Notes: generated by a model from the letters alone, not told the origin. A stretch of DNA of 64,000 nt from Bugula neritina (GCA_964035545.1 OZ037771.1:941628-1005627); one strand, 5' to 3'; positions 3,201-58,900 are shown, counted from the first letter of the stretch. A program made the numbers and translations.

Positions 3201-4893
3201 GAGCCACTCCTGCGAAACCAGGTATGTACTGCCGGTAGTACCCTACTAGGCCCAGGAATGCACGCAACTCAGGGAGGTCGCGGGGGACAGTCCACTCCTT
3301 CACAGCTTGTACCTTCTCTGGATCGGTAGCGACCCCATCACGGCCAACCACATGGCCCAGGTATGTGACTTCTGGCTGCAGGAGTGCGCACTTGGAGGGC
3401 TTCAGCTTCAGTCCGGCTGCCCGGAGACGGTCAAAGACCTCCCGCAGACGACTGACATGAGTCGAAAAGTCTGGGGAGATGACAATGACATCGTCCAGAT
3501 AGATGAGGAGGGTCTTCCAGTGTAACCCACTGAGGACTTGCTCCATGAGCCGTTGGAATGTTGCCGGAGCGGACGTTAGTCCGAATGGCAGTACTTTCCA
3601 CTTCCAGAGCCCGTCGCGAGTAATGAATGCTGCTTTGTCCTGGGCATCAGGACTGAGGGGCACTTGCCAGTACCCGCTAAGCAGATCCAAAGTACTGAAG
3701 TACTTGCTACCCGCGAGGGCATCTAGAGACTCATCTATCCGTGGGAGAGGGTAGGCGTCCTGGATGGTAGCGTTGTTGAGTCTGCGGTAGTCTACGCAGA
3801 ATCTCCAGCTACCATCCTTCTTCTTGACCAGGACCACTGGGGAGCTCCACGCACCGTGGGCAGGCTCAATCAGATCCCGGTCCAGAAGATCCTGTACCTG
3901 TCGGCTCACCTCCTTCTCCTTCTCCGGGCCCAGACGTCGGGTAGGCTGCCTGATGGGAGTGGTGTCGGCTGCCAGGGGTATCTCGTGAGAGATAACCTTA
4001 GTCAGCCCCATGTCTCTATCGCCACGACTGAAGACATCACTGTACTCCGCGAGTAGTTGAGCCAGTACTTGGCGTTCAGTACTACTCGTACAGTTTCCAC
4101 ATGCTCCGCCATACAGGTCAGCCAGATGCTCCGGGACTGCTTCTCGTCTGGTGTGAGGGGGGTTTCCCTGGTTGTCGGCTACTGTCTCCAGTGCCGGACC
4201 CACATCCGCTTCCTGGATGGAGTGGTACTTCCCCACCAGCGCTCCAGCCGATAGTTGGACAGGTTCCGTGAAGGGGTTGATGCACTGCACGAGGAGCTCT
4301 TGCCGACAATCTAGCCGATTCAGGCTGTTTGCTAGTCGGATGGCTCCGTGCGTTCCCTCAACCATCCCCAGGCCGGCGATCCCTTTGCAGTTGACTCTGC
4401 ATCGGAGGGTCGCCTGGGATCTCCCCGGAACCGTGCAGTCCCGCACTACCTGGACTCCGCCCACCAAGGGCCTGCCAAACTTGTCAACACAGACAAGTTC
4501 CTTCCCAGCCATCACCACCACTGACTTCTGGAAATCCATGTGACACTGGTGTTTCTCCAGAAAGGGCATTCCCAAGATGGCGTCCTCCTTCAGCTGGCTG
4601 ACTATGAACGTCTCGTGAATTGCTTGATCACGGACGCGTCCAGGCAGTGAGATGACGCCGTAGAAAGGGATGCATGATCCGTCCGCCAACGTACCATGCG
4701 CACCTTCATACGGCTCGAGGCTCGCCCGCTCTCGAGCACCAAGAGTATCAAAGAGACGCCTACTCAGCAGGTTGGTAGTGCACCCAGTATCCAGTAGGAA
4801 TGTGGCAGCTTTACCCGAAATCTTTCCGGGCAGGAAGTAGCTGCTTCCGTACGGCTGGGTGCTCCTGGAGCGGTCAGTCTCTGGGGGAGACAC
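211..4893 (-). CDS. pol: Gypsy pol polyprotein (aspartic protease, reverse transcriptase, RNase H, integrase, long Pro/Glu-rich C-terminal extension); N-terminus truncated
   Basis: 1560-codon uninterrupted ORF; LLDTG (protease), WRFCVDYRRLN, LPFGL, YLDD (RT), DTDAS..ELLAV..TDH (RNase H), H..H..CEVC zinc finger, VAVDLVGP / HTDQG / VERNNR (D,D35E), KLQPKFVGPY (GPY/F). First codon is GTG at the composition break, not a true start. Confidence 0.95.
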   Translation of the reverse strand: MSPPETDRSRSTQPYGSSYFLPGKISGKAATFLLDTGCTTNLLSRRLFDTLGARERASLEPYEGAHGTLADGSCIPFYGVISLPGRVRDQAIHETFIVSQLKEDAILGMPFLEKHQCHMDFQKSVVVMAGKELVCVDKFGRPLVGGVQVVRDCTVPGRSQATLRCRVNCKGIAGLGMVEGTHGAIRLANSLNRLDCRQELLVQCINPFTEPVQLSAGALVGKYHSIQEADVGPALETVADNQGNPPHTRREAVPEHLADLYGGACGNCTSSTERQVLAQLLAEYSDVFSRGDRDMGLTKVISHEIPLAADTTPIRQPTRRLGPEKEKEVSRQVQDLLDRDLIEPAHGAWSSPVVLVKKKDGSWRFCVDYRRLNNATIQDAYPLPRIDESLDALAGSKYFSTLDLLSGYWQVPLSPDAQDKAAFITRDGLWKWKVLPFGLTSAPATFQRLMEQVLSGLHWKTLLIYLDDVIVISPDFSTHVSRLREVFDRLRAAGLKLKPSKCALLQPEVTYLGHVVGRDGVATDPEKVQAVKEWTVPRDLPELRAFLGLVGYYRQYIPGFAGVAQPLNRLTAKGVRWQWTQEEQQAFDHLKQRLMEAPILAYPDPAKEYILDTDASDHSVGAALSQVQGGSEVVVAYYSKTLAAAEKNYCTTRKELLAVVKAVKHFRPYLYGKSFRLRTDHASLIWLCKRAEPSSQVARWLEILAEFSYRIEHRAGRKHGNADGMSRRPVEDCKQCLHIEQRDGGPARLDVETELVEGTAYRWEHGHLRTETHQDGVQALHANPTLHQNVKELCRLQETLPGAVADIFRAKKEGRRPSEEQQRQGDVEFQLLCRRWDALKVSPDGLLMITLAADNRQQKRDRVVCPRALRRELIWDTHKQAHAGVSRVIRCLRLRWYWPGMTRDVRLRVRQCEVCQASKHGRPTETTGRRRLYAGRPWQVVAVDLVGPMPLSARGNTWILVLTDHFTRWADALAIPDATAPTVARTLDQHVFCYLGLPEQIHTDQGAQFQSQLMGDLCRIWGVNQSRTTPYHPQGNGVVERNNRMLGDALRSLLLGRGQEEWDVVLPQIMRAYRSTPHSATQETPNFLMLGRETRVPEHLTYHVPAPESPVHEYVEGLMDIMGKAHDALRTQQWQTRTEDSEEPPLYQVGDWVWMVSYRRRRGQSAKLQPKFVGPYCVVEVLPNHTYRVERSGQVSVQSEQRLKPYHASPDAVGQAPPLLEPHRQPNRRGRATQPREVEIMVPREADQEQAALIEQLERQQREEREQEQRQALGPPPSLGEDTPTPVLGEGGDPPTRVAQEPPTPPVPVPIERSQRSRRPPRYLADYAVGHLEWPPHEDNPPSTDDHPILAGNSLHHPGEFHQEEDFTQLARELQLTLNCNPDTPKYNLNTVIQTLASAMGVTSPDTQTEERKDTEEASRSDSPPPPAPVSAPRSQQYDTPSSEVCSASVSGPDPEPVELQLTAGEEQGTLYGDHLAGRDEEDPPILAMPRALVARQYWISGAPGNQIEEQTQPTHPQLPRHGQSMALPYRECVLDSAIEAWSHILDPSTEEIESLVHHL

Positions 4894-6278: not shown

Positions 6279-6719
6279 ACAGAGTTACCTGCGCAAAGTT
6301 ACCTGTGCAAAGTTACCTGGACTATTATCATCTCTAGAGTCAGTTTCTAGGTGCGATGCTTTTATGACTTGCATGTAGCTTCTGAGTTTAACTTTTATCT
6401 ATAACTATTTTATTTTTGGACACAATGTCAACCTTGCAGCTGGCTGAATATTAAATATATTAAACCTCTAGGTATTGACTCTCACCGAGTATCTATATTT
6501 GTAGTCATAAGTGTTATGTAATATGGAAAGTGTTATGTAATATAGAAAGGGTTATGTAATATGAAAATAATTAAAGTTTATTTAAATCTGTATAAAGCTG
6601 ATATAAGCACTGGAATACATGATAGTATATTTGTATAATATGTGTTTTGTTTTCCATCACCATACTTAGAGTTTAGGCTGATAGATGTTAGCACGGTTGA
6701 TAGAAAGAAGGGGGCGTAT

Positions 6720-8990
6720 TCATTCTCCACCCACACTTATTTGTCTGGCACTTGAAGTGTCCATCTGCTTTACAGGCAGCTCAGGAATTGTGACTGACTG
6801 CTGACCAGGAGTTGCTTCTCGTGTTGATGACTTTGATTTTAGCGCTGACTTTCTCGTTTTCCCAGTTCCCGGCAAACTGGTCAGGATTTTATCTCGGGCA
6901 GCCGACACCTGCAAGTTTTGGTAGAGTGGTTGTCTTAGAATATGACTAGTTTGTTTAAATATGTGTGCATGCATTGTAGACAGGAGATGTTTTTACCTGC
7001 ATGTCACTGCTTTCATCGTAAGCACTAGTTTGAGGAGGGGGTCTTCGTACGGCCCGCTCTGCTATTGTCGGTTTTATGTCGAATCTTTCTGGATTTTGTA
7101 ATCTTTCTATCCTTCTTTGTTCTACATGGTTTCTTATGACATCATGAGCCTAAAATAGACAATTAGTTTGAATGAATATCAATTCTACAGCACTTGAGTT
7201 TGTCTTCTCAATATAATAAACTATGTTATGTTAATGATACAAATAGCTAAACAGGAATGCCTGCTGAGACTAGGACAACACGGGTTTTAATGCAGCTGAC
7301 AAATAGAGTTTGATAAAAGACATATGTACAGGTTCTACACTTCTACAAGCAGACTAATACTGTGTCAGCTCATGACAGTACAACTTTCAAATCTAGAATG
7401 TTATCACATCTTATTGCTGATAAACATGTTGATTCAGATAAGTTCTGTCTTTCATGCAGGTGCAATGATCTCTACAAATTATAAGCTTGGCATGCAAACT
7501 AAAAACTGAAGATCAATCAGTAGTTGGATGTTGCAGTACTTACTATTGTCTGTTCAGACATCATCTGTATACACAATGACAGTTTAAATAGTCATCAGTC
7601 ACCATAGAATAATGCAATACACACAATGAGCTCTACACACACAATGAGCTCTGCTCACACAATGAACTCTACACACACAATGAGCTCTACACACACTGAG
7701 AGCTCTACACACACAATGAGCTCTACTCACACAATGAGCTTTACACACACAATGAGCTCTACTCACACAATGAACTCTACACAAGCTGGCTACATGCATC
7801 ATATTTTATAGTTGAGTTGTAACTGTGAAACTTTGCCGTTTCAAAATGTTTATAGGTGTTAGTCTGAGTTATAAATGCACTATTTCAGTTTTAAATTAAA
7901 TCTTATTCAACCCATTGACTAATCAGTGCATACCTTAAACTGTGTGTGTAAGATACTTGGCTGAGCCTTTAACTCTGTTCCTTTCAAGTTGTTCTTGACA
8001 GCCTGAGAGGCTGTAGTTCTTGCATGCATAGGCAGCTTATCCTGATACGCTCTGTCTGTAAAATCTATTTCATTTCCTTCTTTTTTTCGAACCCTAAGTA
8101 AACCATGAAATACATAACTAAAACATCTATAATGCTTCGTATCACTTTAAACTTGTGGTAAATTGCACAAACTGTACATATGCAGATTGATGCACTAATA
8201 TATGTTAAGCGATTTTGATTATGCATTGTTACTGCTCAACCTACTGTCTGTTTGTGAGTATTTCATACATTCTTTCTATCAATAACTGAGCAGCTCCTTC
8301 TTTGCAATGCATTGTTCCTTCACTATATTCAGGAGGAATGTCGATGTCATGCTTTTTAAAAAACTGAAACACAAAAGGCATTATTAGATTAGTATTTGAC
8401 ATTTGTAAACTAAATACAGAAGTATAGTAAAAGAACATTACAATAGCATAAGATTGTAACACAATTTGAACTCACATTGTTGAGTAAATTCCAGTTTAGT
8501 TGCTTAGTCTTGAGAGAGGTGCAGTTTGTGTAATAATTGTGCATCTGAATTGCCTGAGGATGATACCATGAAAATATCTCTGCTACTAGATAGCCGTTAG
8601 AAAGATCCCTAAAACAATTATTATTGTTATTTTTAAAAACATACAAAATTTATTATACTGAAATGATTATTCAGAAAAGATATTATAGTAAGTATGATGC
8701 AATTGACCAAGTTTCATACATGTAATGCCAGCATCAAATGCCATGTGCAAACTAGTTGAACAATATTATAAAACCTCTTTAAATTAAAACATTAATGATT
8801 ACTTACAGTGCAACTATTTTATTTAATATTTATTGACGCAGAGTTTAAGTTGTCGGGCAGTTCTAAGCTAACATGACAATTTGGACTACTCTAGTCTAGG
8901 TTTAATGACTTACCATTTGGCATTCTTTACTTGCCATGTCAAGTCTAAGCTCTGCAACCATCTAATTACTTCTCTTGATAACCCAGCCAT
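6720..8990 (-). CDS. SPATA4: Spermatogenesis-associated protein 4 (SPEF1-type CH domain)
   Basis: Exons 8914-8990, 8476-8608, 8245-8363, 7934-8093, 6997-7149, 6720-6908: MAGLSREVIRWLQSLDL..WDLSNGYLVAEIFSWY..TSLKTKQLNW..GTMHCKEGAAQLLIERMYEILTNR. Confidence 0.88.
7618..7785. repeat. 21-bp minisatellite (cacacaatgagctctacacac) in SPATA4 intron
   Basis: About 8 tandem copies visible. Confidence 0.9.
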
Positions 8991-23553: not shown

Positions 23554-26500
23554 ATGGTAAGTTATACTTACTTCTACTCTACCACATCTTAGCTGTAGCA
23601 CTTGCTGGGAGTATAGTAGAATAACAGTTAGTGTTATTATTTTATCGCCTCTTTAATGACTAAGTTTGGGTTCATTTGAACTGATGTCTCTATTGTGGCT
23701 GCACTCTCTATGTACATGTATATCTACACCTACTAGTGGAACTGTGTATGTACATGTATATCTACACCTACTAGTGGAACTGTGTATGTACACATTTACA
23801 ATTACTAATATAACTGTGTATGTAAACCTACCAGCTACATGAAAATGAAATTACTTAATAACATTTTCAGCAAGTGAAGTGGAAGCGTGATGTTCTAAAG
23901 ACTCACATTAAATGTATGGAAATTTTCGAAAGAGAGAATCGATACTGTATTATTAGAATTAAGTAGGTGTTTTCTGAACCACCTGCCAGTTGAGTCATGG
24001 GCAATCATGACAGGTACAGCAAGTGCCCTATCACGGGCTTTCCATGTACCGATCTCAGATCGATCTCAGCAAGATCGATCTGAGAAATGTGCTCAGATCG
24101 ATCATTTTTCCATGGGAGTGTCAGATCAATCTCTCGAAGTTGCCTCCTCTTAAGTGAAGGATACTTTAAAAGTATAATTTGTTCACCTATTTGAGTGATT
24201 AAAGCTACTACTGTTGAAAACAAGATGGTAGTAGTCTAAAATTTAATCCCAGCTATAAAATATACGCAGCAAAGCTTTCAGTGTATGGTAATTTGGCCAA
24301 TTTAAAATAATTAATTTTAATCTTTTAGCTTGACAGCTTATATAAAATTAATGGCTGTCTTGCAGATTATTAATAAACTTACAGGATTGTTAGGCTTAAA
24401 ATTACAAAGAAAATAGCTAATGAAACTAAGTTTTGATAGTCATTTAAATTCAATTTAAATTTTCCCATTTTTTTACCCTCTACTGCATATAATTGAGTTT
24501 TCTTAATCACTGTACTGAAAGTCAAAGTTTTGGCATCTGAAAAAGTGGCTATCATGATTATTAAATACTTTGCTTAGTAATTATCAATAACTTATCATTT
24601 TTATTAGCAGACAACATTGTAGCGCGCAGTCTTTTTCTACTTCTCAGATCGATCTGGCGTCTTTCCATGGTCTTATTGTCATGAGATCGATCTTTGGCGT
24701 CTTTCCATGGATCGATCTCATGGAAAGCCGGTGTATGTGCTCTATGCTACCACTTGACATCTGTACAGTTAACCTTAACTCCCAACCTGGAGACATAAAT
24801 TTGAAGCTATAGTAACTGATAGCACGTGTGTAGTAAGTAGGTCATCTCTGTTTATCCAGAGAGCATACAGCAGCAGGTGGTAAGCTATTTTATTGCCTGT
24901 ACCATCTCTGCTTACCAATACATATGAAGAAGGGATCCTAAACTTATTAAGTATTGTATTTTGCTATTTTAGAGTCAAATACACAAGACATGGATATTGA
25001 GTGTACTGGTAGTTGTGCTCTCTCTGTATACAAGTCGGGCAGCTGAGATCAGCTGGATAGGTAACTGGCTCTACTCTGTACAATACTTGCTCAGCTCATA
25101 GCATTGGCAAATACAGCTGTCTCAGCTCTGAACTGTCTTTATTGTCGACTATCAGTGTTATAGCAGCATACATATCACGCTGCCATAGGTGGAGCCTGTT
25201 GAACAGGTGCTGACCATGTCATTGAAATGTAAAAGTGTCAAGTTTTTATCCTAACCTGTCATTCCACTCAAGTATATAGTACTATGAACTAGTGGAGTAG
25301 TGAATTCAAATGGTTTGTGTTTCGTGTCTAGTCTTTAGCAAACAAAGTAGAATGCATGACAAAAAGTGACAACGTTTTAATACGGAGTTATACTTGAAGC
25401 TGTTTAAGTTGAGGTTCTTATCAAATATCAAAGTTTAGGCAGAAAAAAGAAATAAATATTTGACATAATATTTTTACGAACATAAAAAGACTTTAGGTGA
25501 GCCGTTGGCCAGACTATGTGCAGTTCATGTGTCATTATATACTAACTATGTATATTAGCCTGTATTATTATATACTAACTATGTATATCAGCCTGTATTA
25601 TTATATACTAACTATGTATATTAGCCTGTATTATTATATACTAACTATGTATATTAGCCTGTATTATTATATACTAACTATGTATATTAGCCTGTATTAT
25701 TATATACTAACTATGTATATTAGCCTGTATTATTATATACTAACTATGTATATCAGCCTGTATTATTATATACTAACTATGTATATTAGCCTGTATTATT
25801 ATATACTAACTATGTATATTAGCCTGTATTATTATATACTAACTATGTATATTAGCCTGTATTATTATATACTAACTATGTATATTAGCCTGTATTATTA
25901 TATACTAACTATGTATATTAGCCTGTATTATTATATACTAACTATGTATATTAGCCTGTATTATTATATACTAACTATGTATATTAACCTGTATTATTAT
26001 ATACTAACTATGTATATTAGCCTGTATTATTATATACTAACTATGTATATTAGCCTGTATTATAATATACTAACTATGTATATTAGCCTGTATTATTATA
26101 TACTAACTATGTATATTAACCTGTATTATTATATACTAACTATGTATATTAACCTGTATTATAATATACTAACTATGTATATTAACCTGTATTATTATAT
26201 ACTAACTATGTATATTAGCCTGTATTATAATATACTAACTATGTATATTAGCCTGTATTATTATATACTAACTATGTATATTAACCTGTATTATAATATA
26301 CTAACTATGTATATTAACCTGTATTATTATATACTAACTATGTATATTAGCCTGTATTATAATATACTAACTATGTATATTAGCCTGTATTATTATATAC
26401 TAACTATGTATATTAGCCTGTATTATAATATACTAACTATGTATATTAGCCTGTATTATTATATACTAACTATGTATATTAGCCTGTATTATTATATACT

Positions 26501-29500
26501 AACTATGTATATTAGCCTGTATTATAATATACTAACTATGTATATTAGCCTGTATTATTATATACTAACTATGTATATTAGCCTGTATTATAATATACTA
26601 ACTATGTATATTAGCCTGTATTATTATATACTAACTATGTATATTAACCTGTATTATTATATACTAACTATGTATATTAGCCTGTATTATTATATACTAA
26701 CTATGTATATTAGCCTGTATTATTATATACTAACTATGTATATTAACCTGTATTATTATATACTAACTATGTATATTAGCCTGTATTATTATATACTAAC
26801 TATGTATATTAGCCCACATTATTATATACTAACTATGTATATTAGCCCACATTATTATATACTAACTATGTATATTAGCCTGTATTATAATATACTAACT
26901 ATGTATATTAGCCTGTATTATTATATACTAACTATGTATATTAACCTGTATTATTATATACTAACTATGTATATTAGCCTGTATTATAATATACTAACTA
27001 TGTATATTAGCCTGTATTATTATATACTAACTATGTATATTAACCTGTATTATTATATACTAACTATGTATATTAGCCTGTATTATTATATACTAACTAT
27101 GTATATTAGCCCACATTATTATATACTAACTATGTATATTAGCCCACATTATTATATACTAACTATGTATATTAGCCTGTATTATTATATACTAACTATG
27201 TATATTAGCCCACATTATTATAAACTAACTATGTATATTAGCCTGTATTATATACTAACTATGTATATTAACCTGTATTATTATATACTAACTATGTATA
27301 TTAGCCTGTATTATTATATACTAACTATGTATATTAGCCTGTATTATAATATACTAACTATGTATATTAGCCTGTATTATTATATACTAACTATGTATAT
27401 TAACCTGTATTATTATATACTAACTATGTATATTAGCCTGTATTATAATATACTAACTATGTATATTAGCCTGTATTATTATATACTAACTATGTATATT
27501 AACCTGTATTATTATATACTAACTATGTATATTAGCCTGTATTATATACTAACTATGTATATTAGCCTGTATTATTATATACTAACTATGTATATTAGCC
27601 CACATTATTATATACTAACTATGTATATTAGCCCACATTATTATATACTAACTATGTATATTAGCCTGTATTATTATATACTAACTATGTATATTAGCCC
27701 ACATTATTATAAACTAACTATGTATATTAGCCTGTATTATATACTAACTATGTATATTAACCTGTATTATTATATACTAACTATGTATATTAGCCTGTAT
27801 TATTATATACTAACTATGTATATTAGCCTGTATTATTATATACTAACTATGTATATTAGCCTGTATTATTATATACTAACTATGTATATTAGCCCACATT
27901 ATTATATACTAACTATGTATATTAGCCTGTATTATTATATACTCTCTTTTAGGGACATACAAGTGGGCGGCTGCCACCACACTTGGTGCCAACATCACCT
28001 TCCATTGTGTTCTGCAAGACAACGGCACAGATGTGCTGCCAGAAAATGCAACTGCTATGACAAACACTGCCCAGTGGCGGCTGGTTGGTGACTCAACTCT
28101 GCGGAAAGACAGTTACTCTGTTGAGAATAAGTGAGTCATTCTATTGAGAATAAGTGAGTCATTATATTGAGAATAAGTGAGTCATTCTATTGAGAATAAG
28201 TGAGTCATTCTATTGAGAATAAGCGAGTCATTATATTGAGAATAAGTGAGTCATTCTATTGAGAATAAGTGAGTGAACTCTGCTAACTAGGAGTTATCTT
28301 TACATTAGTTATAATGCTACGTCTTGGAGGTGGTTGACTATTTCATTTTATCTAAACTTTTGTGCGGCTGAAATAATAAATTCCACTCCCAATTTAACAT
28401 ATAGACAAGAGTCAAATATTAGAATAGACTAGTATTGGTAAAACAAGGCATACTAGAGGGTTACTGATAATCACTACATCTCCACAAATGTTCGCCATTA
28501 ATTCCATTCACTACAACTTTTTGAGAGGATAACTCTAATTACACTCTCAACTGCTGCCCAGTAGCATGGGATAGAGGCAGCACCTGATGACCTTTAGTGT
28601 CAGGTCACATGGCTCCTTTGCTGCCTTGAGCTTACCATGAAACTCTTGTGTTGCAGAGTTGTAAAAGGAGACCAACTTCTCATCATGGGTGTGTCAGAGG
28701 CAGACAAAGGGATCTACATGTGCCGCGTGGACCTACAGTGCTCTGTTGTGGTTAGTATAAAACTATCTGAATTTACTAGATGACCCTGTTGAAGGTACTG
28801 TATCACCACATCCCCCTCCACTCCCCACCTGATTGCTATATTGGTATGATCATGTGGTATAGCACAATATTAGGCAATAAAATCTTAGAGAATTGTCCAG
28901 TTAAATATAATATTATATACAACTACTCTAGTATGTAGTATATATTGCATGTTGTTACAGGATGGATGTGACGGCAAGACAGAGATGTGGTACAAGCATG
29001 GACTGAATCTAAATGGCCCCCTTTATACGGACCTGCTAGAGAAATACACTAGAAACATCATAACGGGGAGCATTGCTGCTGCCAGCGTAACAAGTCAGTA
29101 TTACTTGAGTTTCATTACTTCTAATATTTCTAATATACTTGGAAAAAAATTCAGAATGAAAATAAATAGGTTTCAAAACGGAAATTTGCAGACCCTGCAA
29201 GTGGTAGCTCAGGGGTGATGGCTTTATGTTTCAAAACGGTGTTTTGTGAGTTCAAAATTCAGCTATTGATGGCTTTTTTTCAGTGTAAATATTTTCAAAA
29301 TTAAAAATCAGCAGGTTTTAAAAGTAGGATATTTGGAGAGTACAAGTGCTAGCTCAGTGGTAGTGGTTTGGTCTTGAAATCCGGCATTTTGTGAGTTCTA
29401 AACTCAGTTAACTTTTTTAAAAAAAAAATTTCTACATAGATATTTCATAATAAAAAACAGTAGGTTTTAAGAAAGTTGAATAAGAAGGTACAAGCGGTAG

Positions 29501-31588
29501 CTCAGTGGTAGAGGTTTGGTCTTGTAATCCTGTGTTTTCTGGGTTCAAAATTCAGTTATTTACTAAAAAATATTATTTTTTCTATAAAAATACTTTTAAA
29601 ATGAAATGTGAAATAGCATTTTTAGGTGCACAATGGGAAGGTACAGGCGGTAGTAGAGTGGTAGAGGCTTAGTCTTGTAATCCTATGATTGTGGGTTCAA
29701 GCCTCTGCCTCTGTATGGTGCTTACCTGGGTGTAGTTATATATTTTGCTGTAAAATAAATTGAACTGGTAAGCATCAGATGAACTAGTATGTCTTCTTTC
29801 AAGGGGGACCCAAAGTAGCACAGTGGTAGAGCTCATGTTCAGACACTTCAGAGGTGTGGGTTCAAATCCAGGTTGAGCTCAACTCATTGAAGTCTTCTAG
29901 GAGTCTCACTCTCTCAGGCACTCTATATAATCAGTGAGAGCCAATAAGAAATAATTATTTTGCTAAAATTTTCTATTTTGCTATTACTAAATCTTAGCAA
30001 AATATTTATTTCTTATTGGCCCGAGTGCCTGAGAGAGTGAGACTCCTAGAAGACTTCAATGAGTTGAGCTCAACCTGGATTTGAACCCACACCTCTGAAG
30101 TGTCTGAACATGAGCTCTACCACTGTGCTACTTTGGGTCCCCCTTGAAAGAAGACATACTAGTTCATCTGATGCTTACCAGTTCAATTTATTTTACAGCA
30201 AAATATATAACTACACCCAGGTAAGCACCATACAGAGGCAGAGGCTTGAACCCACAATCATAGGATTACAAGACTAAGCCTCTACCACTGAGCTACCGCC
30301 TGTACCTTCCCATTGTGCACCTAAAAATGCTATTTCACATTTCATTTTAAAAGTATTTTTATAGAAAAAATAATATTTTTTAGTAAATAACTGAATTTTG
30401 AACCCAGAAAACACAGGATTACAAGACCAAACCTCTACCACTGAGCTACCGCTTGTACCTTCTTATTCAACATTCTTAAAACCTACTGTTTTTCATTATG
30501 AAATATCTATGTAGAAAATTTTTTTTTTAAAAAGTTAACTGAGTTTAGAACTCACAAAATGCCAGATTTCAAGACCAAACCACTACCGCTGAGCTAGCAC
30601 TTGTACTCTCCAAATATCCTACTTTTAAAACCTGCTGATTTTTAATTTTGAAAATATAATGAATTTGTCATGTTCTACCCCAAAAAGTAAATACATATGC
30701 CTTAGCCGCAACCCCACAGGCATAAATGTACGGTTGAGCCAATATTATTCTCGTCCAGTAGACAGTGTTTTTTATATTGCTATCTTTAGAAACTTATATC
30801 AAGATGCAACTGTTGTCTTAGACAAGCCAGCCGATTGTGGTACTCATAATATGATTTCCTGGCGCTTATTGAGCAACTTGACTTGTCAGACTTGGAAAAA
30901 ACTTAAACTAAATTTCCTCAATCCTGACTAGTTGTTTAATTTTACAAGAAATTCTATCAGCCAAAAGTGGGATAAAAAGAATTTGTACTAAAATAATTAT
31001 TACAAATTAGCCCATCAGTGGCCAGTATAAAATAGTAATATATTACGCCTTTTAATCTCTAAATTTAAGAGTGCCAAGAGCAACAATTACAAATTTTTTT
31101 TCTGGTATTACACTATACCTACAAGCATACTACATCTATAATATATCTACAAGTACAGTATATTTACACTATACCTACAAGCATACTACATCTATAATAT
31201 ATCTACAAGTACAGTATATTTACACTATACCTACAAGCATACTACATCTATAATATATCTACAAGTACAGTATATTTACACTATACCTACAAGCATACTA
31301 CATCTATAATATATCTACAAGTACAGTATATCTACACTATATTTACAAGTATACTATATCTACAAGTACAGTATATCTACACTATATCTACAAGTATACT
31401 ATATCTACAAGTACACTATATCTACACTATATTTACAAGTATACTATATCTATATTTTAGCGATATTCGCACTCCTCTGCTTAGTCTACAAGTTCCGACA
31501 CAAACAGCCCGAGGAATATGACCCTGACACTGAGCTGGACACATACACAGGAAACAAGATGTCTGCTGAAATCAAAACAGAGCTGTAA
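23554..31588 (+). CDS. Orphan single immunoglobulin-domain type I membrane protein (~207 aa)
   Basis: Exons 23554-23556 (ATG|gtaagt), 24973-25060, 27953-28130, 28657-28750, 28961-29093, 31461-31588 are phase-compatible. Signal peptide WILSVLVVVLSLYTSRA; Ig motifs GANITFHC..W..LLIMGVSEADKGIYMC; TM IITGSIAAASVTTIFALLCLVY; tail ends -KTEL. The ATG micro-exon is the least certain part. Confidence 0.8.
24032..24733. mobile_element. Non-autonomous TIR DNA transposon (MITE), CAC..GTG ends, 3-bp TSD (CMC/EnSpm-like)
   Basis: TIR cacgggctttccatg / catggaaagccggtg (14/15 match), flanked by TAT on both sides; ~7 subterminal AGATCGATCT-type palindromes; no coding capacity. Confidence 0.8.
25532..27942. 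repeat. 33-bp minisatellite, ~73 copies (ctaactatgtatattagcctgtattattatata)
   Basis: Direct observation; explains the spurious 864-aa ORF; ends a few nt before the exon acceptor at 27952. Confidence 0.97.
28121..28275 (+). repeat. 23-bp tandem repeat duplicating the splice donor of Ig-gene exon 3
   Basis: ttgagaataa|gtgagtcattcta about 7 copies; the first copy is the true junction. Confidence 0.9.
29196..29880 (+). pseudogene. Array of five degenerate tRNA-like (tRNA-Thr(UGU)-related or SINE-head) units, ~150-bp period
   Basis: Units at ~29196, 29341, 29489, 29641, 29808 each have A-box TAGCTCAGTGGTAGAG-like and B-box GGTTCAA-like sequence; GGTCTTGTAA anticodon arm in the middle units; stems are imperfect, so not functional tRNAs. 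Confidence 0.75.
29289..30657. repeat. Long inverted repeat (635-bp arms, ~98-99% identical) made of tandem tRNA-derived units; foldback-like element
   Basis: Arms 29289-29923 and 30023-30657 are reverse complements with roughly 9 mismatches; inner stem 29940-29970 / 29989-30020. Confidence 0.95.
30066..30605 (-). pseudogene. Mirror copy of four tRNA-like units in the right arm
   Basis: Reverse complement of the left-arm units; the copy at ~30230-30305 retains an intact TAGCTCAGTGGTAGAG A-box. Confidence 0.75.
31108..31452. repeat. ~54-57-bp compound minisatellite ending at the acceptor of the last Ig-gene exon
   Basis: tacactatacctacaagcatactacatctataatatatctacaagtacagtatatt repeats. Confidence 0.85.
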
Positions 31589-31995
31589 GCCTCTTTGTTT
31601 AGGAAGCAAGCAACAAAGACTAAAATTAACTATTAATATATTACTAAAAGAAACAGAATATTGCTATGAAATTAAGAAACCCCTGCATTTGAGAAATAAC
31701 ATAACGTAGTGGCTAGTTGGCATTTATTTATGTTTTAATGTGCACTTTGTTCAAAATTCTGAAAATGCATTCTAAATTTAATATTTATAAATTGTCAAAT
31801 AAAGTAAAAGACATTTCAACAACTAGTATTTGCATAGCAAAGATGAAGTAACTTATATAAACTATAAATACAATCCTGTTGCTATAGCAACATAAACTGC
31901 ACAGATTACACCTGCTTCTTCTACTGACCGCAGAATGCTTTTATAAATAATTGAAAAATTATCTAAGCTGGTTAGACACTGAATATGGGGAGTTG

Positions 31996-34900
31996 TCACC
32001 TCTCTTGAATATAAAACATTTCTTGTTTCTGGAAATCTAAATCACTGAATGTCTGTTCTAAAGGGAGTTCGGATATTTTACGTCGTGGGAAGTTTGAAAC
32101 TATTTCATATTTTTTTTCATCAAACCCAAGGCTGCGGACGTATAAGACCAGAGCCTAAAATTAATAACTGGAGTGTGAATATATAAACTAAGGCTCATTG
32201 CATACATACTAAACTCAACACTATAAAGTACTCATACTATAAAGTACTCATACTATAATAAAGTACTCACACTATAAAGTACTCATACTATAGAGTACTC
32301 ATACTATAAAGTACTCATACTATAAAGTACTCATACTATAAAGTACTAACACTATCAAGTACTCATACTATAAAGTACTCACACTATAAAGTACTCACAC
32401 TATAAAGTACTCATACTATCAAGTATTCATACTATAAAGTACTCACACTATAAAGTACTCATACTATAATAAAGTACTCACACTATAAAGTACTCACACT
32501 ATCAAGTACTCATACTATAAAGTACTCACACTAGACATTCTAACAGGTGCTAATAAAGCATAGAATTATTTTATCCAGACAGAGAAACAAGACTCGTAAT
32601 GCATATATGATGTTTTCACACCGATTCGAACTACTAACAAATATTCACATGACCCTCACCTTCAACTTAGACTGTGACTTGACGCACCACTGACACCTGG
32701 ATTGGTCGGGTTTTCTAAGTAATATCTGAACGTCAGTGCCTAGAAAGTAGAGAACTCAAGCTATTACACCACCAGTCACTATTACATCACCAGCCAGGTT
32801 ACAATAAGAAGAGTATACCATGACACAAGAGAGGTGTACCTACCGTGGACAGATGTGTACTCTCTCCAGTCTGAGCTCTCTGGATGTGTGTCGTGTGGAC
32901 TCTGTTTAGATAGTATGTTCTGAGTACTGTCTGTGTGTGAGGTATTGTGTACACTATTGTTAGGAGTTGTGTTCCCTGTAGCGCTTTGTGAAGATTTTAT
33001 AGATTGAACACCTGACTGGAGTTGTTTTCCCTTATTTTTGGACGGTTTACTGTCTTCCTACAACAATGGAGTAGAGTTCAGTATGATTTGTATAAGCGAC
33101 TTTCAGACTCTGCAAACCCTACGTCTCAGATTTTCTACATGCTCAGTCTACTGTTGGTATATAGCTAGTCTATAGTCAGTCTATAGCTAGTATATAGTCA
33201 GTCTACTGTTGGTCTATAGCTAATCTATAGCTAGTCTGTAATTAGTATATAGTCAGTCTATAGCTAGTATATAGTCAGTCTACTGTTGGTATATAGCTAG
33301 TCTATAGCTAGTATATAGTCAGTCTACTGTTGGTATATAGCTAGTCTATAGTTAGTTTATAGTCAGTCTACTGTTGGTATATAGCTAATCTATAGCTAGT
33401 ATATAGTCAGTCTACTGTTGGTATATAGCTAGTCTATAGCTAGTATATAGTCAGTCTACTGTTGGTATATAGCTAGTCTATAGTCAGTCTACTGTTGGTA
33501 TATAGCTAGTATATAGTCAGTCTACTGTTGGTGTATAGCTAGTCTATAGTCAGTCTACTGTTGGTGTATAGCTAGTCTATAGCTAGTCTATATTTAGTTT
33601 ATACTACCAATACAGAACAAATAAAATTATTTATATTTACACAAAAGTTTCTACAAAACAAGTCGGTAAGTACAAATAGCACATCCTGTGAGTCCAGTGC
33701 ATAACATAAACAAGCGACAGCAGTGCACTATTTACATCTCTACATTTAATACAAGTACACTAATACACACATGATCGCTGCTGCCGCTGTCTGAACCTGA
33801 GAAAGTCTCTAGGTCGCTGCCGGAGTCTGACTCATAGACGAGATCTTCCTTCTGCTGATTCTCTACAAGGGAGGCCTGTATGGCTGCCTCTAACTGCAGC
33901 TCCTCACTAGCTTCTAGCTTCGGATTAATGGCAATCTGCAGCAGACACTAAACTGTTATCTGCAGCAGATACTAAACTGTTATCTGCAGCAGATACTAAA
34001 CTGTTATCTGCAGCAGATACTAAACTATATATACACACACTGTAATATATACACTGTAATATACACACTGTAATATATGCACTGTAATATACACACTGTA
34101 ATATACACACTGTAATATACGCACTGTAATATACACACTGTAATATACACACTGTAATATACACACTGTAATATACGCACTGTAATATATGCACTGTAAT
34201 ATACGCACTGTAATATACGCACTGTAATATACGCACTGTAATATACGCACTGTAATATATGCACTGTCATATATGCACTGTAATACACGCACTGTAATAT
34301 ACGCACTGTAATATATGCACCGTCATATATGCACTGTAATATATGCACTGTAATATATACACTGTAATACCTTGTAAGGTGAATTTGTCACAGAACTGCA
34401 TTCTGTACCATCTGGTTTAGAGTGAACTCGAATAAATTCCTCCAACTCCTACAACAGGTAGTCTGAGTTGAACAACACGTAGTCTTAGTTGAACAACAGC
34501 TAGTCTGAGTTGAACAACAGGTAATCTGAGTTAAACACTAGAAACAACCTTGGGATGAAATAGCCCAAGGTCCAAGGAATGTGAGTGACATCATGCTGTA
34601 GGACTGACCTGTGTGAATGACTTAAGAGTGACTGCGTTCCAGGTGTGTTGCAGCTCCGCAGTTAATGGATGTAGGATGGATATGTACGGCCAATGAGCCA
34701 CAGGATAAAATTGAATAAACTTGCTACCTTCGGCGCTGTCGTGGTACACCTGGAAAAAGAGAATACATACTAGAACAATCTAGAACACATATTATGTGTG
34801 CAAGATGAAACGATGTTTGCAGTGTATGAGGGAGAAATGGTACACACATATTACATAGTATCCCAAGTTCTACGTGGTGTAATACGGTATACTATGTGAT

Positions 34901-36848
34901 ATGTTTTAAATTTCACTAATTCAGATGAGAAAGAAACAACGAATCAACTGGCAAAAAATACTCATTGAAACTCAACTTTGGGACCACCCATGTGCGTATG
35001 TTTCTATTTACAGTACTTTGGTATTACCACCTACAAGGGCAAACAGCATATAACCTTACCTGCCAGAATATGAAGTGTTTACAGACCAAACTGCGTATGT
35101 GGGGGTCCTTCCAAATGTCCCTATTGAGCACCTGACAGGAGAACTCCGCCGTGTTCTGTATGTTCACCAGTATCCACTTGTTGTCAAGTTTAGCCTTAGC
35201 CTGCACCTGCAACGCACACAGAGAGAGGTCCAGGTTGGAGAGTAAACCACTTCACTACAAACTTACAGACTCGAAAGAACCGTGGTGTATAATACAGACT
35301 ACACACTTACAGACTCGAAAGAACCATGGTGTATAATACAGACTACACACTTACAGACTCGAAAGAACCGTGATGTATAATACAGACTACACACTTACAG
35401 ACTCGAAAGAACCGTGGTGTATAATACAGACTACACTTACAGACTCGAAAGAACCGTGATGTATAATATCTAAAGGAGGTCTGAACAGATCTTCTAATTT
35501 AGAAAGACGCTGAGAACTGATTGAAGATTCTTCTCCATTCTTTAACCTCCTCTCCTGCTCCCCTGAAATGACACAAACATGACTCATCACGCCTACTGAG
35601 AAGTCCATAAGACACGCCTACTGAGAAGTCCATAAGACACGCCTATTGACTAGAACTAAACAGAGTCTTACTGGCTTCAGCTTGAAAGTCTCGGAACTTG
35701 TCGAACACCGAGTCCCGATGTGTACGCCGTCTCTTCCGCTCATTGGCCAACAGGTAATGATCATGTTCGACAAGTATTTCACGCTTTTGTGGGATTGGGG
35801 CCCTAACCTCTTCGCAGCTTCCAGATCTGCTCCTGTTGGTATAAAAAAATTCATATTGCAGAAAAATTTGTAAGAATATATGAGTTTTACTGATACCATA
35901 AAGATAGACTTATGTAAAGTTAAAGTAAAGTAAAATATTAATAAATTTGCAAATAAGATATATGCTAACGGTAAAGCTTCAGCCACAGCACCATTGCTGT
36001 CCATATGCATAGAAACAGCTAAATCTAAGTTCCCGCCACATGCTTCCAAGTAATTCTTAGCAACCTCAGCATCTGTCACTCCTACAATTGAAATAAATTG
36101 ACACACTAGAGACACAGACAGTGTATGAAGTTATTCTAGAAAATTGATGCATAATAGATAAACTATTCATCATTAACATGCCGAATGGTTAAAAGACGAG
36201 TCAAACATTAATTCTGAATCTCACTTATTTTATTTATTTTATAATCATAATGAAAATCAGTACTACCTTGAAGTTGATGAGTTCAATTCAAAATAACAAA
36301 TTAAAATGGCGCTTATAAAATTAAATGCATGGCCATATTCACATTGGTATGATGAGACCCCATAGCCATAGGCTGCTAATAGTAGTACTAATAGTAGCAC
36401 TATTAACTCTAAGTTGAAACTGTACTTGTAGAAATAGATAGTAGATATAATCATAATAATGCAATCACAATGACATAGTATATCATATACTTATACTTAT
36501 AGTACTACTTACAGTTACGGTTATATTCATATTGACTACGTTTACTTACCGATTTAGTTTTGCAAGTATAAGTATTAATATATTAACTATTGTCTAGTAG
36601 TATTAGTATTATTCTATTACTATTACTATTAGTATTAGTATTAGTGACACTGAGTCAGTGTCTGACTACGAGTAAGTTTAAATTTATTCGAACTTGATTA
36701 GTAATTAGTATTATAATTAAAAAGTTTATTTTAAAACCAGCAAAGGATTTTAACATAGTAACAATAATAGAGCATAAAGTTTCGTTATAGAAATATCAAC
36801 ATTACCTGTCACTGTCAAAAAGCTAGTGATTAAATCTTCCTCCTCCAT
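31996..36848 (-). CDS. UBXN7: UBX domain-containing protein 7 (UBA-UAS-UIM-UBX)
   Basis: Exons include 36806-36848, 35970-36081, 35672-35832, 35441-35562, 35060-35200, 34609-34749, 32660-32739, 31996-32154; motifs YLEACGGNLDLAV, EEVRAPIPQK, FRDFQAE, LEDLFRPPLDI, KWILVNIQ..EFSCQVLNRDIW, SNFPRRK..YIQER*. Confidence 0.93.
32215..32533. repeat. 16-bp minisatellite (actataaagtactcat)
   Basis: About 19 copies. Confidence 0.9.
33143..33602. repeat. Compound minisatellite (tatagctag / cagtctactgttgg)
   Basis: Direct observation. Confidence 0.85.
33933..34370. repeat. UBXN7 intron entirely filled by two repeats: 24-bp acceptor-duplicating unit and 15-bp unit (acactgtaatatac)
   Basis: atctgcagcagatactaaactgtt x4, then ~23 copies of the 15-mer up to the donor. 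Confidence 0.9.
35260..35468 (-). repeat. 42-44-bp repeat duplicating the UBXN7 exon 4 end and donor
   Basis: 5 copies of cacggttctttcgagtct|gtaagt. Confidence 0.9.
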
Positions 36849-55957: not shown

Positions 55958-58900
55958 TTATAAGTGCTCAATAGTCCTGCGTGTGGCGGGTGTTTCGTCT
56001 GGAAATACTATATTCAGATTTTGAGAGTCCCTGTGTTTTGATTTACCCAGTAATAGAGATCTATAGTGAATGACATCTGTCGGATATACCATGTTGTAGA
56101 ACACCAGAAATACTAGCCTATAAAATATACATTTATACTTCTCAAAATAGAACAGACAAATCTTGTATACTGAAAGAACACTACAGCAAATATTAAACTG
56201 AAAAATTGCTTAGTCTTATTGAACTAGATAAGTAGTTTGCTAAAACCTACATTTTATATGAATGTACACAACATGTAAATATCACAATCAAGAAGGTACA
56301 TTAAAATAGAATAGAAATATTTCAATTTCTCTATATTCAATAGCACAATAAAATAGCCTTCTATTTATCAGTTGAGTTGTATTACGCTACACAACTGCAG
56401 ACCACCCAACAGCTGACGTACTACTTACCGAGGAACCACGGCCACGATAACACCCAACATGATACAGAGCCAGCTGTCCGCATAACTTAGTATGGTCTGC
56501 ATCACCCAGTAGGGGTTGGAGGGCGGGTCGCATTTCAAACACGCCGTACCAAGAATCAGCAGGAAGACCCAGAAGCCCACCAGACTCAACACAATTGAGC
56601 AGATGAACGGCCATTGCTACAGACAATACATGAAGGTGAGAATGGAGAGACACTCAGTGCGTACATTCAGCTATACCAGCAAACAATATATTTAGTATTT
56701 TCATTACAGCAACACATTTGTGTAAGAAGGATATTATGTATGGTATACAAGTGACAGAAGAACTGTTAGAGAAGAACAATGTGAAGATGACTCTTACTTA
56801 CCCAGTACCTGGTCTCAAATGCCAGGACAATCAGCTGGGCAAATACTAGGGTTACAGTCTGAGTCGTACCAAAACTCCACAATCCGATATCAGCATCAGC
56901 GTAGTGCTACATTGAGAGACAATACACAGAGTATAGACTGAATACTACATCTTTACACGTGTTCACAGGTGTATACAGGCTGGTGTAAAGGTCCATATGA
57001 ACATTCTGTGTACACAACAAATATTATTATTAGCAGAAGACTCACCATATAGGATATGAAGAAAATAGCTAAACTCTGGTACAGGGAGTCTAGGATTTGT
57101 ATCCAATAAGAGTATCGGTGGTACAACTGCAAACACCAACATCATAACCATATATATAGTGCTGTGGGGAACATGCATTGTCTTATATATCATATATACC
57201 ATCATAACCATATATATAGTGCTGTGGGGAACATGCATTGTCTTATATACCATATATATATCATCATAACCATATATATAGTGCTGTGGGGAACATGCAT
57301 TGTCTTATATATCATATATACCATCATAACCATATCTATAGTGCTGTGGGGAACATGCATTGTCTTACACAAGTGATGACAGGATATGAAATACAAACAC
57401 AGCGCGTACCTTATTTTCCGGCCCCTGCTGATAGAGAGTTGGGTGGGCCATGAGAATGTGGGCGGGCAGATCTTGGTCTAGAATAGCGAATATAATGGGC
57501 GGTACGCTAGTGAAGAGGAGATGGAACACTATAAGATACACCTGGTCAATGTGGGTCTGTCCAGAGAACATACAGAAGATCTGATACCAGAAGAGCACAA
57601 AGATCAAGTTCTGCAACACAAGATACACAACATAAAACACTGCTGAATAATGAACATACACCATTGTACAATATATATTAATATTACATAGAGTATAGTA
57701 TTATATAGAGTATAGTATTATATAGAGTATAGTATTATATAGAGTACAGTATTATATAGAGTATAGTATTATATAGAGTATATATTATATAGAGTATAGT
57801 ATTATATAGAGGATAGTATTATACAGAGTATAGTATTATATAGAGTATATATTATATATAGTATAGTATTATATAGAGCATAGTATTATATATAGTATAG
57901 TATTATATAGAGCATAGTATTATATAGAGTATAATATTATATAGAGCATTGTATTATATAGAGTATATATTATATAGAGTATAGTATTATATAGAGTATA
58001 TATTATATAGAGTATATATTATATAGAGTATAGTATTATATAGAGTATATACTATATAGATTATTATATAGAATAGTAAAGTGTAACACTCACAGAGTTT
58101 TTAAAGAAGTTATAGAGAGTCATAATAGCCAGTCTGTCATATGACCAGTGACCGTGGACAAACAGAAGTCTTACAAGATGTTTGAATCTCCCAAGTGAGA
58201 AGTCTGCAGCCATTGATGCCTGCTTTCCTTCCAGACCTTCTATACCTGCATGGCGAAGAAGAAAATCTCTGTGTACATATATGTGACTACAGTAAAGTAA
58301 CTACGCGCACATGTGTGACTACAGCAAAGTAGCTACATGTACACATGTGTGACTACAATAAAGTAACTACATGTAAACATGTGTGACTACAGAGAGGTAA
58401 CTACACATACACATGTGTGACTACAAAGAAGTAACTACACTGTATAACTGGTGTAACACTGACCGACACCGACGTTGGCCGTCCTGATCATATTCACATC
58501 GTTGGCTCCATCCCCTATGGCCAGAGTCAGTTTCTTACTCTTGGTCTTCACCAGCTCCACGATCTGCTCAACAGTAAACACAACAATACACATCTGAGAG
58601 AGAGGACTGCAGCTACACATTCCATCTCTCAGGGAGTGACAACTACCATAATCTCACCTGAGCTTTCTGGGAAGGTGTGGTTCGGCAGCATAGGACAGCC
58701 AGACAGCTGTCAGCTAGCCGGAGGAATGATTTAGAAAGGTTTCCTGAGAAGATGTGAGAGAGGGTTTTGCCATCAACTATGAGACACTTGGGGATATGAG
58801 AAGGTTGAGTGTCTGTAGAAGCTGTCGAGGCAGCACCAGACCTTGTGAGTGTGCCACGCAAGTGACCTTGCAATGCTGACTCCACTTCGTCAGCATTGGG

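What the first reader, a model, noticed from the sequence alone, without database searches (positions are those of the whole stretch)
29196..30657. 1.37-kb near-perfect palindrome built from tandem tRNA-like units inside an intron
Seen: 635-bp arms at ~98-99% identity with a second ~30-bp stem in the centre, so the whole region can fold as one hairpin. Each arm has four tRNA-like heads (A- and B-box) at ~150-bp spacing, pointing inward; a fifth, more decayed unit lies outside the left arm. There is no ORF and no TSD was found. Established: A/B boxes are Pol III internal promoters bound by TFIIIC, and long intramolecular dsRNA is a Dicer/ADAR substrate. Inference: (a) an undescribed foldback transposon whose TIRs are made of tRNA-derived repeats, (b) a hairpin-RNA locus producing siRNAs against a tRNA-SINE family, driven by host transcription or convergent Pol III, or (c) a TFIIIC insulator array. 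This is the best candidate for a novel system in the window.
Basis: partly seen in the sequence, partly recalled or inferred. Interest (0 to 1): 0.82.

Follow-up and report, generated by a model that had tools for sequence, protein, structure and literature searches.

The report
Intronic palindrome of tRNA-like repeats
A real 1.37-kb mirror-image duplication of decayed tRNA-like repeats lies in a probable intron of a bryozoan gene; its two halves stay alike, probably by copying from each other, and nothing shows it is a jumping gene or a silencing-RNA gene.

Summary
The arms are 29289-29923 and 30023-30657, 635 nt each and 99% complementary. The 99-nt spacer holds its own 32-nt inverted repeat. 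Each arm carries four inward-pointing tRNA-like units about 150 bp apart. None scores as a tRNA.

It is not an assembly artefact. A second locus (contig C3, 0.99 Mb) has the same palindrome with the same centre, inside a 5-7 kb segmental duplicate that includes the flank on one side only. The loci are 85-86% alike, but arms within a locus are 99% and 95.5% alike. There are 55 concerted sites against 0 orthologous-arm sites, so the arms co-evolve.

Whole-genome scans find the unit heads at these two loci only. That leaves no dispersed SINE family to target, no defined transposon ends and no target-site duplication. Arm mismatches show no G:U strand bias.

Four more loci share the lay-out (type I units, then a GGGGACCC-type unit, then the centre). 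One is a 94% palindrome. Three converge without any arm identity, so the perfect hairpin is not the conserved feature. All six loci lie within 1 Mb of a telomere.

[quoted passage not shown] The scan noted the related 94% foldback earlier (s1-451140).

The parts
28961..29093 (+). Inferred penultimate exon of a plus-strand Ig-like membrane-protein gene; it ends in the first half of a transmembrane helix. Donor CAA|GTCAGT, phase 1.
   Evidence: Open frame and splice signals read. Upstream exons 27913-28131 and 28598-28780 give weak Ig-domain hits. Inference only; no RNA data.
29094..31460 (+). Inferred last intron (2367 nt) that holds the palindrome (58% of its length) and a 28-bp minisatellite.
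   Evidence: GT at 29094, acceptor TTTTAG| at 31455-31460, both phase 1; the junction joins a hydrophobic stretch followed by KFRHK. The joined model was not searched.
29150..29288 (+). Decayed outer unit(s) of the tandem array, outside the left arm.
   Evidence: Direct-repeat copies 29186-29244 and 29198-29267 at 63-100% to the inner units; D9 pair 29167-29188 / 29225-29246.
29289..29923 (+). Left arm: three type I tRNA-like units (heads at about 29343, 29491, 29640), then one type II unit (29803-29885, starting GGGGACCC, with consensus A and B boxes 43 nt apart).
29924..30022 (.). Spacer with the central short inverted repeat 29940-29971 / 29989-30020 (17-nt loop) and a 14-nt asymmetry on the left.
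   Evidence: The same central repeat is present at the C3 paralogue (L007 7754-7779 / 7794-7819).
30023..30657 (-). Right arm, the mirror image of the left arm. Its outer junction with unrelated flank (30657/30658) is shared with the C3 copy.
   Evidence: the flank motif ACATGACAAA is aligned in C7R and C3lo.
31052..31477 (.). 28-bp (17+11) minisatellite in the same intron; it runs up to the acceptor site.
   Evidence: family D1.
31461..31588 (+). Inferred last coding exon of the Ig-like membrane-protein gene (second half of the TM helix plus a short tail, then the stop).
   Evidence: 125 of 128 nt are identical at the C3 copy, although the flanks are 84-90%.
31999..32154 (-). Last coding exon (UBX domain) of a convergent minus-strand UBXN7-like gene. 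Its stop lies about 1.3 kb from the right arm.
   Evidence: Pfam UBX, E 2.2e-06. UBA_4 at 35621-36130 and Thioredoxin_7 at 35027-35251 on the same strand.

Best explanation
This is an old inverted (fold-back) duplication of a local tandem array of decayed tRNA-derived ~150-bp repeats. It lies in the inferred last intron of an Ig-like membrane-protein gene, close to the 3' end of a convergent UBXN7-like gene. It probably arose once, by fold-back priming or a replication template switch at the short inverted repeat that still marks its centre. It was later copied, with 4-7 kb of flank, to a second chromosome end. In each copy the two arms are kept nearly identical by arm-to-arm (intrachromosomal) gene conversion, not by selection. 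Any long double-stranded RNA that forms when the host gene is transcribed is a by-product. Shown: the structure, its single origin, the co-evolution of the arms, the lack of a dispersed family, and the lack of tRNA function. Inferred: the fold-back origin, gene conversion as the homogenising process, and the intron.
For: 1. The structure is real and old. A paralogous locus, C3:990093-991454, has the same palindrome, the same central short inverted repeat and the same outer junction.
2. Homology between the loci runs on for window 30673-33697 and 36160-36364 on one side only. It includes the 3' exons of both convergent genes. So the copy was made by segmental duplication.
3. Between loci the arms are 85-86% alike, the same as the flank (83-88%). 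Within a locus they are 99.0% and 95.5% alike. Site patterns from unit 2 to the centre: 55 AABB (concerted), 0 ABAB and 0 ABBA.
4. The arms also co-evolve in the C3 copy, where the neighbouring UBX exon carries an in-frame stop.
5. Arm-to-arm transitions show no G:U bias on either strand: 2 v 2 at C7 and 10 v 6 at C3.
6. The unit heads occur only at these two loci, in exact and 3-mismatch scans of all 216 Mb (BLAST).
7. Three related loci ('family B') keep the convergent lay-out with no arm identity at all.
8. All six related loci lie within 1 Mb of a telomere-repeat contig end. Such regions are known for ectopic exchange.
9. Precedent: inverted-repeat structure conserved far better than sequence in Caenorhabditis (PMC1803023); arm-to-arm conversion in sex-chromosome palindromes (PMC3723533).
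Against: Gene conversion is inferred from the pattern; no conversion tract was seen directly. Selection for pairing would give the same AABB pattern, and the G:U test has little power (4 and 16 transitions). Long palindromes with short spacers are usually unstable (PMC7999016), so survival through about 15% divergence at two loci, and in a third lineage, is notable. The innermost unit keeps perfect A and B boxes in all four arm copies. This is not significant after allowing for the number of 20-nt windows, but it is compatible with constraint. The C3 copy keeps the neighbouring last exon at 97.7%, so that locus may not be free of selection.
Confidence: 0.6

Rival explanations
1. A hairpin-RNA (hpRNA-like) locus. 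The host pre-mRNA, or read-through from the convergent UBXN7-like gene, folds into a ~670-bp duplex that Dicer cuts into endo-siRNAs or ADAR edits. The arms are kept paired by selection.
For: A near-perfect 635-bp stem in a probable intron, -1172.7 kcal/mol. Pairing is retained at two paralogous loci despite ~15% sequence divergence and in a third lineage. Either strand gives the same hairpin, and two genes converge on it. hpRNA loci of this geometry are known in Drosophila (PMC10317233, PMC10292708).
Against: Known hpRNAs are inverted copies of their targets. Here no other sequence in the genome matches the arms except the paralogous palindrome. There is no G:U-over-A:C bias in arm mismatches. 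The three family B loci keep the lay-out without pairing. No expression or small-RNA data are at hand.
Confidence: 0.15
2. A relic of a low-copy foldback-type mobile element whose long terminal inverted repeats are made of tRNA-derived subrepeats. Transposition or fold-back regeneration would explain symmetrical arms at unrelated sites.
For: The arms are built of tandem subrepeats, as in Drosophila FB elements (my own knowledge). Six loci in three sequence lineages share the lay-out in unrelated gene contexts.
Against: No TSD and no shared terminal sequence. The left end of the palindrome simply runs on into more decayed units. The only close copy shares one-sided flank, which points to segmental duplication. 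The 870-nt arm of the third foldback and the 2-kb family B block have no other copies. All loci are telomere-proximal, which fits ectopic exchange better than transposition. Arm homogenisation after the C7/C3 split is needed in any case.
Confidence: 0.1
3. A cluster of Pol III promoter modules that binds TFIIIC and/or makes short Pol III transcripts. It would act as a chromatin boundary or a small-RNA source between two convergent genes. The innermost unit of each arm would be the active one.
For: The innermost unit has consensus A and B boxes 43 nt apart, as in tRNA genes. It is unchanged in these boxes in all four arm copies. Its GGGGACCC-N13-GGTAG.GC-N26-GGTTCRA frame is kept in three diverged lineages with identical spacing. 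The first T-run lies about 150 nt downstream in two lineages (read).
Against: Only one unit per arm is intact. Units 1 and 2 carry TTTT inside the body. No unit reaches the tRNA gathering score. No convincing conserved fold: 13 pairs, -10.5 kcal/mol. The box conservation is not significant once the number of 20-nt windows is allowed for. Binding and transcription cannot be tested here.
Confidence: 0.1
4. An assembly artefact: a fold-back chimeric long read.
Against: The arms differ at 9 sites. There is a 14-nt asymmetry and a 17-nt loop at the centre. The locus lies mid-contig. An 85%-identical paralogue on another contig has the same palindrome with the same centre and junction.
Confidence: 0.02

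Closest known systems
Inverted repeats and palindromes maintained by arm-to-arm gene conversion (Caenorhabditis long inverted repeats, PMC1803023; primate X/Y palindromes, PMC3723533, PMC8327919)
   Same: Arms are far more alike within a locus than homologous arms are between loci: 99% and 95.5% against 85-86%, with 55 concerted sites and none of the orthologous-arm type. The structure is conserved better than the sequence.
   Different: Much smaller (0.6-kb arms against 9 kb to 1.45 Mb on sex chromosomes). It is non-coding, built from tRNA-derived tandem repeats, autosomal and intronic. The comparison is between paralogous loci in one genome, not between species.
Drosophila hairpin-RNA (hpRNA) loci that give endo-siRNAs (PMC10317233, PMC10292708)
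   Same: A long, near-perfect intramolecular inverted repeat inside a transcription unit, able to form several hundred base pairs of dsRNA.
   Different: hpRNAs are inverted copies of the genes they silence. Here no target exists elsewhere in the genome. No small-RNA evidence.
Foldback (FB-type) transposons with inverted repeats made of tandem subrepeats (my own knowledge, not checked in a paper here)
   Same: Long inverted arms composed of tandem units, no coding capacity, and a variable centre.
   Different: No TSD, no conserved termini and no multi-copy family. The one close copy arose by segmental duplication with flank.
Palindrome formation by fold-back at a short inverted repeat; palindromes as fragile sites (review PMC7999016; mechanism partly from my own knowledge)
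   Same: A short inverted repeat (32 nt, 17-nt loop) sits exactly at the centre of the large palindrome, as that mechanism predicts. The loci are near telomeres.
   Different: This is an interstitial, small and evolutionarily stable palindrome, not a giant amplification product.
tRNA genes, tRNA pseudogene arrays and tRNA-derived SINEs
   Same: A-box and B-box motifs, a tRNA-Thr-like anticodon arm (CTTGTAA), T-runs after the units, and a ~150-bp tandem period.
   Different: No unit passes a tRNA model. No dispersed copies, no SINE body or tail, and no TSDs.

Membership tests
Gene-conversion-maintained palindrome | Arms more alike within a locus than homologous arms between diverged loci | tested here: met
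   99.0% and 95.5% within a locus against 85-86% between loci; 55 AABB, 0 ABAB, 0 ABBA sites.
Gene-conversion-maintained palindrome | Single origin: same centre and same outer junction in the compared loci | tested here: met
   The central short inverted repeat and the right-hand junction are homologous at C7 and C3.
Gene-conversion-maintained palindrome | Conversion tracts observed directly (population or pedigree data) | not testable with these tools
   One assembly only.
Foldback (FB-type) transposon | Long inverted arms built of tandem subrepeats | tested here: met
   Four units per arm, spacing 145-153 bp.
Foldback (FB-type) transposon | Target-site duplication and defined termini | tested here: not met
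   No direct repeat at 29288/29289 and 30657/30658. The array continues outside the left arm. None at the third foldback either.
Foldback (FB-type) transposon | Several copies in unrelated flanks | tested here: not met
   Only one other copy, and it shares 4-7 kb of flank on one side. The more distant relatives are each single or 3-copy blocks.
hpRNA / endo-siRNA locus | Long inverted repeat within a transcribed unit | tested here: inconclusive
   The inverted repeat is shown. Transcription is only inferred from a predicted intron and a convergent gene.
hpRNA / endo-siRNA locus | Arms homologous to a target gene or repeat elsewhere | tested here: not met
   No match outside the two palindromes by BLAST or by exact and 3-mismatch pattern scans of the genome.
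hpRNA / endo-siRNA locus | 21-23-nt small RNAs from the stem | not testable with these tools
   No small-RNA data.
tRNA gene / tRNA-derived SINE | Cloverleaf that passes a tRNA model | tested here: not met
   ARAGORN finds 0. Rfam RF00005 gives 17.2-20.8 bits against a gathering score of 29.
tRNA gene / tRNA-derived SINE | Internal Pol III promoter (A and B boxes) | tested here: inconclusive
   A box in 3 of 4 units per arm; strict B box in 1 of 4. Activity is unknown.
tRNA gene / tRNA-derived SINE | Dispersed copies | tested here: not met
   Heads are found only at the two loci.
TFIIIC-bound insulator / ETC array | TFIIIC occupancy at B boxes | not testable with these tools
   Only the sequence motif could be scored.

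The most novel reading that the evidence does not exclude
The six loci are a small, old family of 'convergent Pol III module arrays' kept in telomere-proximal regions of a bryozoan genome. The GGGGACCC-type innermost unit would be a live Pol III or TFIIIC element. The members with identical arms would feed long intronic dsRNA into an RNAi or ADAR pathway. That would make this a functional element class not described in animals.
Probability: 0.12. Interest if true: 0.65.

Novelty: new member of a known kind. Interest (0 to 1): 0.35.

Why it matters
This is a clean small-scale case of concerted evolution of palindrome arms. Two paralogous copies in one genome serve as an internal clock. They show that a 0.6-kb-arm palindrome with a very short loop can persist and stay symmetrical through about 15% sequence divergence in an animal autosome. 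It also removes a tempting false lead: neither a new foldback transposon nor an anti-SINE hairpin is supported. If RNA data later show small RNAs or Pol III transcripts, the six-locus family with its conserved convergent lay-out near telomeres would become a much more interesting object.

Tried and rejected
- **Dispersed SINE or TE family.** BLAST of the arm and of single units, plus exact and 3-mismatch pattern scans of the whole genome, found only the C7 and C3 loci.
- **tRNA genes.** ARAGORN and Rfam gave nothing above threshold. The plant miRNA-family hits only reflect a generic long hairpin and lie far below gathering scores.
- **Selection for RNA pairing.** I tested it by G:U against A:C bias of arm mismatches. 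There is no bias, but power is low.
- **Higher conservation of tRNA-like heads than of spacers between C7 and C3.** The profile is roughly uniform. Two 20-nt windows with no change (the A and B boxes of the innermost unit) are not significant among about 33 windows.
- **Conserved fold of the innermost unit across three lineages.** Weak: 13 pairs, -10.5 kcal/mol.
- **Host-gene paralogy as the reason for the other loci.** The third foldback and family B lie next to unrelated genes. C3 has an unrelated SGPP/PAP2-like gene upstream.
- **Independent assemblies or transcripts.** I searched with an ORF that lies in the arm and found no candidate, so conservation in other species could not be tested.
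- **TE ends for family B.** The three-way alignment gave fuzzy borders, with a retroelement inserted at one copy, and no inverted ends or TSD.
- **Literature.** No paper on bryozoan repeats or on tRNA-built foldbacks turned up.
- **Not human.** The contig belongs to a 216-Mb genome with TTTGGGG telomere repeats. Earlier notes call it Bugula neritina.
Full report
**Observation**

- The arms are 29289-29923 and 30023-30657, 635 nt each and 99% complementary, 99 nt apart.
- The spacer holds a second inverted repeat, 29940-29971 / 29989-30020 (32 nt, 94%), which leaves a 17-nt loop.
- No other inverted repeat of 120 nt or more exists in the 64-kb window.
- The 1369 nt fold into a single hairpin of -1172.7 kcal/mol.
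- Each arm holds four tRNA-like units with start-to-start spacing of 145-153 bp, all pointing to the centre. A fifth, more decayed copy lies at 29186-29267, outside the left arm.

The units are tRNA-derived but are not tRNAs.
- ARAGORN finds none. No Rfam family reaches its gathering score. The tRNA model gives at most 20.8 bits against 29.
- The A-box consensus occurs six times in the arms, against 0.67 expected in the whole window.
- The strict B-box consensus is kept only in the innermost unit of each arm.

**Genome and context**

The window is C7:941628-1005627 of a 216-Mb assembly. Earlier notes of this scan call the organism the bryozoan Bugula neritina; I did not test that. It is not human.

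On the minus strand a UBXN7-like gene runs from a UBA_4 exon (35621-36130), through a Thioredoxin_7 exon (35027-35251), to a UBX last exon (31999-32154). It ends about 1.3 kb to the right of the palindrome.

On the plus strand there are Ig-like exons with weak Pfam hits. They are followed by an exon 28961-29093 that ends in half a hydrophobic helix, with donor CAA|GTCAGT.
- An acceptor TTTTAG| at 31460 opens a last exon (31461-31588) that completes the helix, followed by KFRHK and a short tail.
- Both sites are phase 1.
- I therefore place the palindrome in a 2367-nt last intron, of which it makes up 58%.
- This is inference from sequence. I did not build or search the joined model.

**Copies elsewhere**

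The arm finds one other locus, C3:990093-991454, and that locus is also palindromic.
- Its arms are 92-98% complementary in pieces, and it has the same short central inverted repeat.
- Homology between the loci does not stop at the palindrome. Window 30673-33697 and 36160-36364 match C3 990076-986181 in reverse order at 80-88%.
- The left flank, 27900-29288, is unique in the genome.
- The shared block carries the last exon of the Ig-like gene (125 of 128 nt identical) and the UBX exon, which has an in-frame stop at C3.
- Upstream at C3 lies an unrelated SGPP/PAP2-like gene.

So the second copy arose by segmental duplication of a block of roughly 5-7 kb. It did not arise by insertion of an element whose ends are the palindrome's ends.

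**The arms co-evolve**

I made a four-way alignment of the two C7 arms and the two C3 arms.
- From unit 2 to the centre it gives 99.0% identity between the C7 arms and 95.5% between the C3 arms.
- Any C7 arm against any C3 arm gives 85-86%.
- Site patterns: 55 sites where both C7 arms agree and differ from both C3 arms, and none where orthologous arms agree against their partners.
- The centre and the right-hand junction are homologous in the two loci, so the palindrome predates the duplication.

Either gene conversion between the arms or selection for pairing must then have kept the arms alike. I favour gene conversion for four reasons.
- The arms diverge between loci as fast as the flank.
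- The same homogeneity holds in the C3 copy, next to a pseudogenised exon.
- Transitions between arms are not biased towards G:U on either strand (2 v 2 at C7, 10 v 6 at C3).
- This behaviour is documented for inverted repeats in Caenorhabditis (PMC1803023) and for sex-chromosome palindromes (PMC3723533).

At C7 all nine differences lie in the outer 200 nt or in one A box.

**No target family and no transposon signature**

- BLAST with single units hits only the two loci. So do an exact gapped pattern and 31-33-nt head patterns with up to three mismatches, scanned over the whole genome.
- The genome is rich in tRNA-like sequence (about 18,700 first-look candidates), but none of it is this family.
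- There is no target-site duplication, and the array simply runs on outside the left arm.
- A 69-aa open stretch in the arm has no protein relatives.

**A wider family of the same lay-out**

It is a foldback with 870-nt arms (94%) and a 167-nt spacer, and it is single-copy.
- It shares almost no sequence with our palindrome.
- It does share the plan: type I units 147 bp apart, then an innermost type II unit that begins GGGGACCC, then the centre.
- The frame GGGGACCC-N13-GGTAG.GC-N26-GGTTCRA is found, exactly, only in the innermost units of these three palindromes.

With up to three mismatches the frame adds three more loci on C7, at 0.258, 0.381 and 0.745 Mb.
- These are three 84-92% copies of a ~2-kb block found nowhere else.
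- Each has a decayed unit, a type I unit, a type II unit and TCAGGCACTC repeats. That motif also ends our arms.
- These face four tRNA-like units on the other strand, about 155 bp apart.
- The two sides converge but are not alike in sequence.

So the convergent arrangement is older than the arm identity and survives without it. This argues that the perfect hairpin is not what is conserved. The neighbouring genes differ at every lineage.

**Position on the chromosomes**

C7 starts with (CCCCAAA)n and ends with (TTTGGGG)n, and C3 starts with (CCCCAAA)n. These contig ends are therefore telomeric. All six loci lie within 1 Mb of such an end: 0.26, 0.38, 0.75 and 0.97 Mb from the left end of C7, 0.41 Mb from its right end, and 0.99 Mb on C3. 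This fits spread by ectopic exchange between distal chromosome regions better than it fits transposition.

**Verdict**

- The foldback transposon, in the form proposed, is not supported.
- The anti-SINE hairpin, in the form proposed, is not supported.
- The TFIIIC array cannot be tested here.

The best-supported explanation (about 0.6) is an old fold-back duplication of a tRNA-pseudogene array, kept symmetrical by arm-to-arm gene conversion, with any dsRNA as a by-product. The minority readings remain open until RNA or ChIP data are examined:
- hairpin-RNA source (0.15);
- relic mobile foldback (0.1);
- Pol III / TFIIIC module (0.1).

In kind, this is a new member of the known class of conversion-maintained palindromes, with an unusual building block and an unexpected small family of relatives.

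Noticed in passing
L054 (C7:1-1500), L055 (C7:15812010-15813509), L056 (C3:1-1500): Contig ends carry long (CCCCAAA)n / (TTTGGGG)n arrays and no TTAGGG. The telomere repeat of this animal appears to be TTTGGGG, not the usual metazoan motif. C7 looks telomere-to-telomere.
   Followed up: partly
L032 4031-5938 (C7:15405030-15406937): A second kind of foldback: 870-nt arms at 94%, 167-nt spacer, single-copy, inside or beside a glucose-6-phosphate-1-epimerase-like gene. It has the same type I / type II / centre plan as the palindrome under study but almost no shared sequence.
   Followed up: partly
L051 4690-5920; also L052 and L053 (C7:0.258, 0.381, 0.745 Mb): Three 84-92% copies of a ~2-kb block in which three tRNA-like units on one strand face four on the other around an AT-rich centre, with no arm identity. 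One copy has a reverse-transcriptase-bearing insertion at its right border (L051 about 6390-6700).
   Followed up: partly
L007 6427-6555 (C3:989426-989554), compared with window 31461-31588: The duplicated last exon of the Ig-like membrane-protein gene is 125/128 nt identical between C7 and C3 (2 synonymous changes, 1 replacement), while the surrounding DNA is 84-90% alike. Possible causes are purifying selection on an orphan or re-used exon at C3, or recent interlocus conversion. Unexplained.
   Followed up: partly
L007 5858-6013 (C3:988857-989012): The copy of the UBX-domain last exon has an in-frame stop and several replacements. It is a pseudo-exon of the UBXN7-like gene.
   Followed up: yes
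window 211-4893 (-): An uninterrupted 1560-aa ORF that by eye reads as a Ty3/gypsy-type retrotransposon polyprotein (protease, reverse transcriptase, RNase H, integrase, chromodomain-like tail; not scanned against Pfam), in a GC-rich (58-59%) stretch at the window's start.
   Followed up: no
window 25497-28091 and 31052-31477: A 2.6-kb array of a 33-bp satellite lies just upstream of the Ig-like exons. A 28-bp (17+11) minisatellite runs right up to the acceptor site of the intron that holds the palindrome. Other satellites at 33143-33603 and 34017-34370 recur at dozens of loci.
   Followed up: no
whole genome: About 18,700 first-look tRNA-like candidates in 216 Mb, far more than a normal tRNA gene set. 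The genome seems to be full of tRNA-derived sequence, of which the units studied here are a private, two-locus variety.
   Followed up: no
window 56000-64000 (-): Exons of a P4-type ATPase (flippase-like) gene, recognised by eye from the DGANDV and TGDKQETA motifs in six-frame translations.
   Followed up: no
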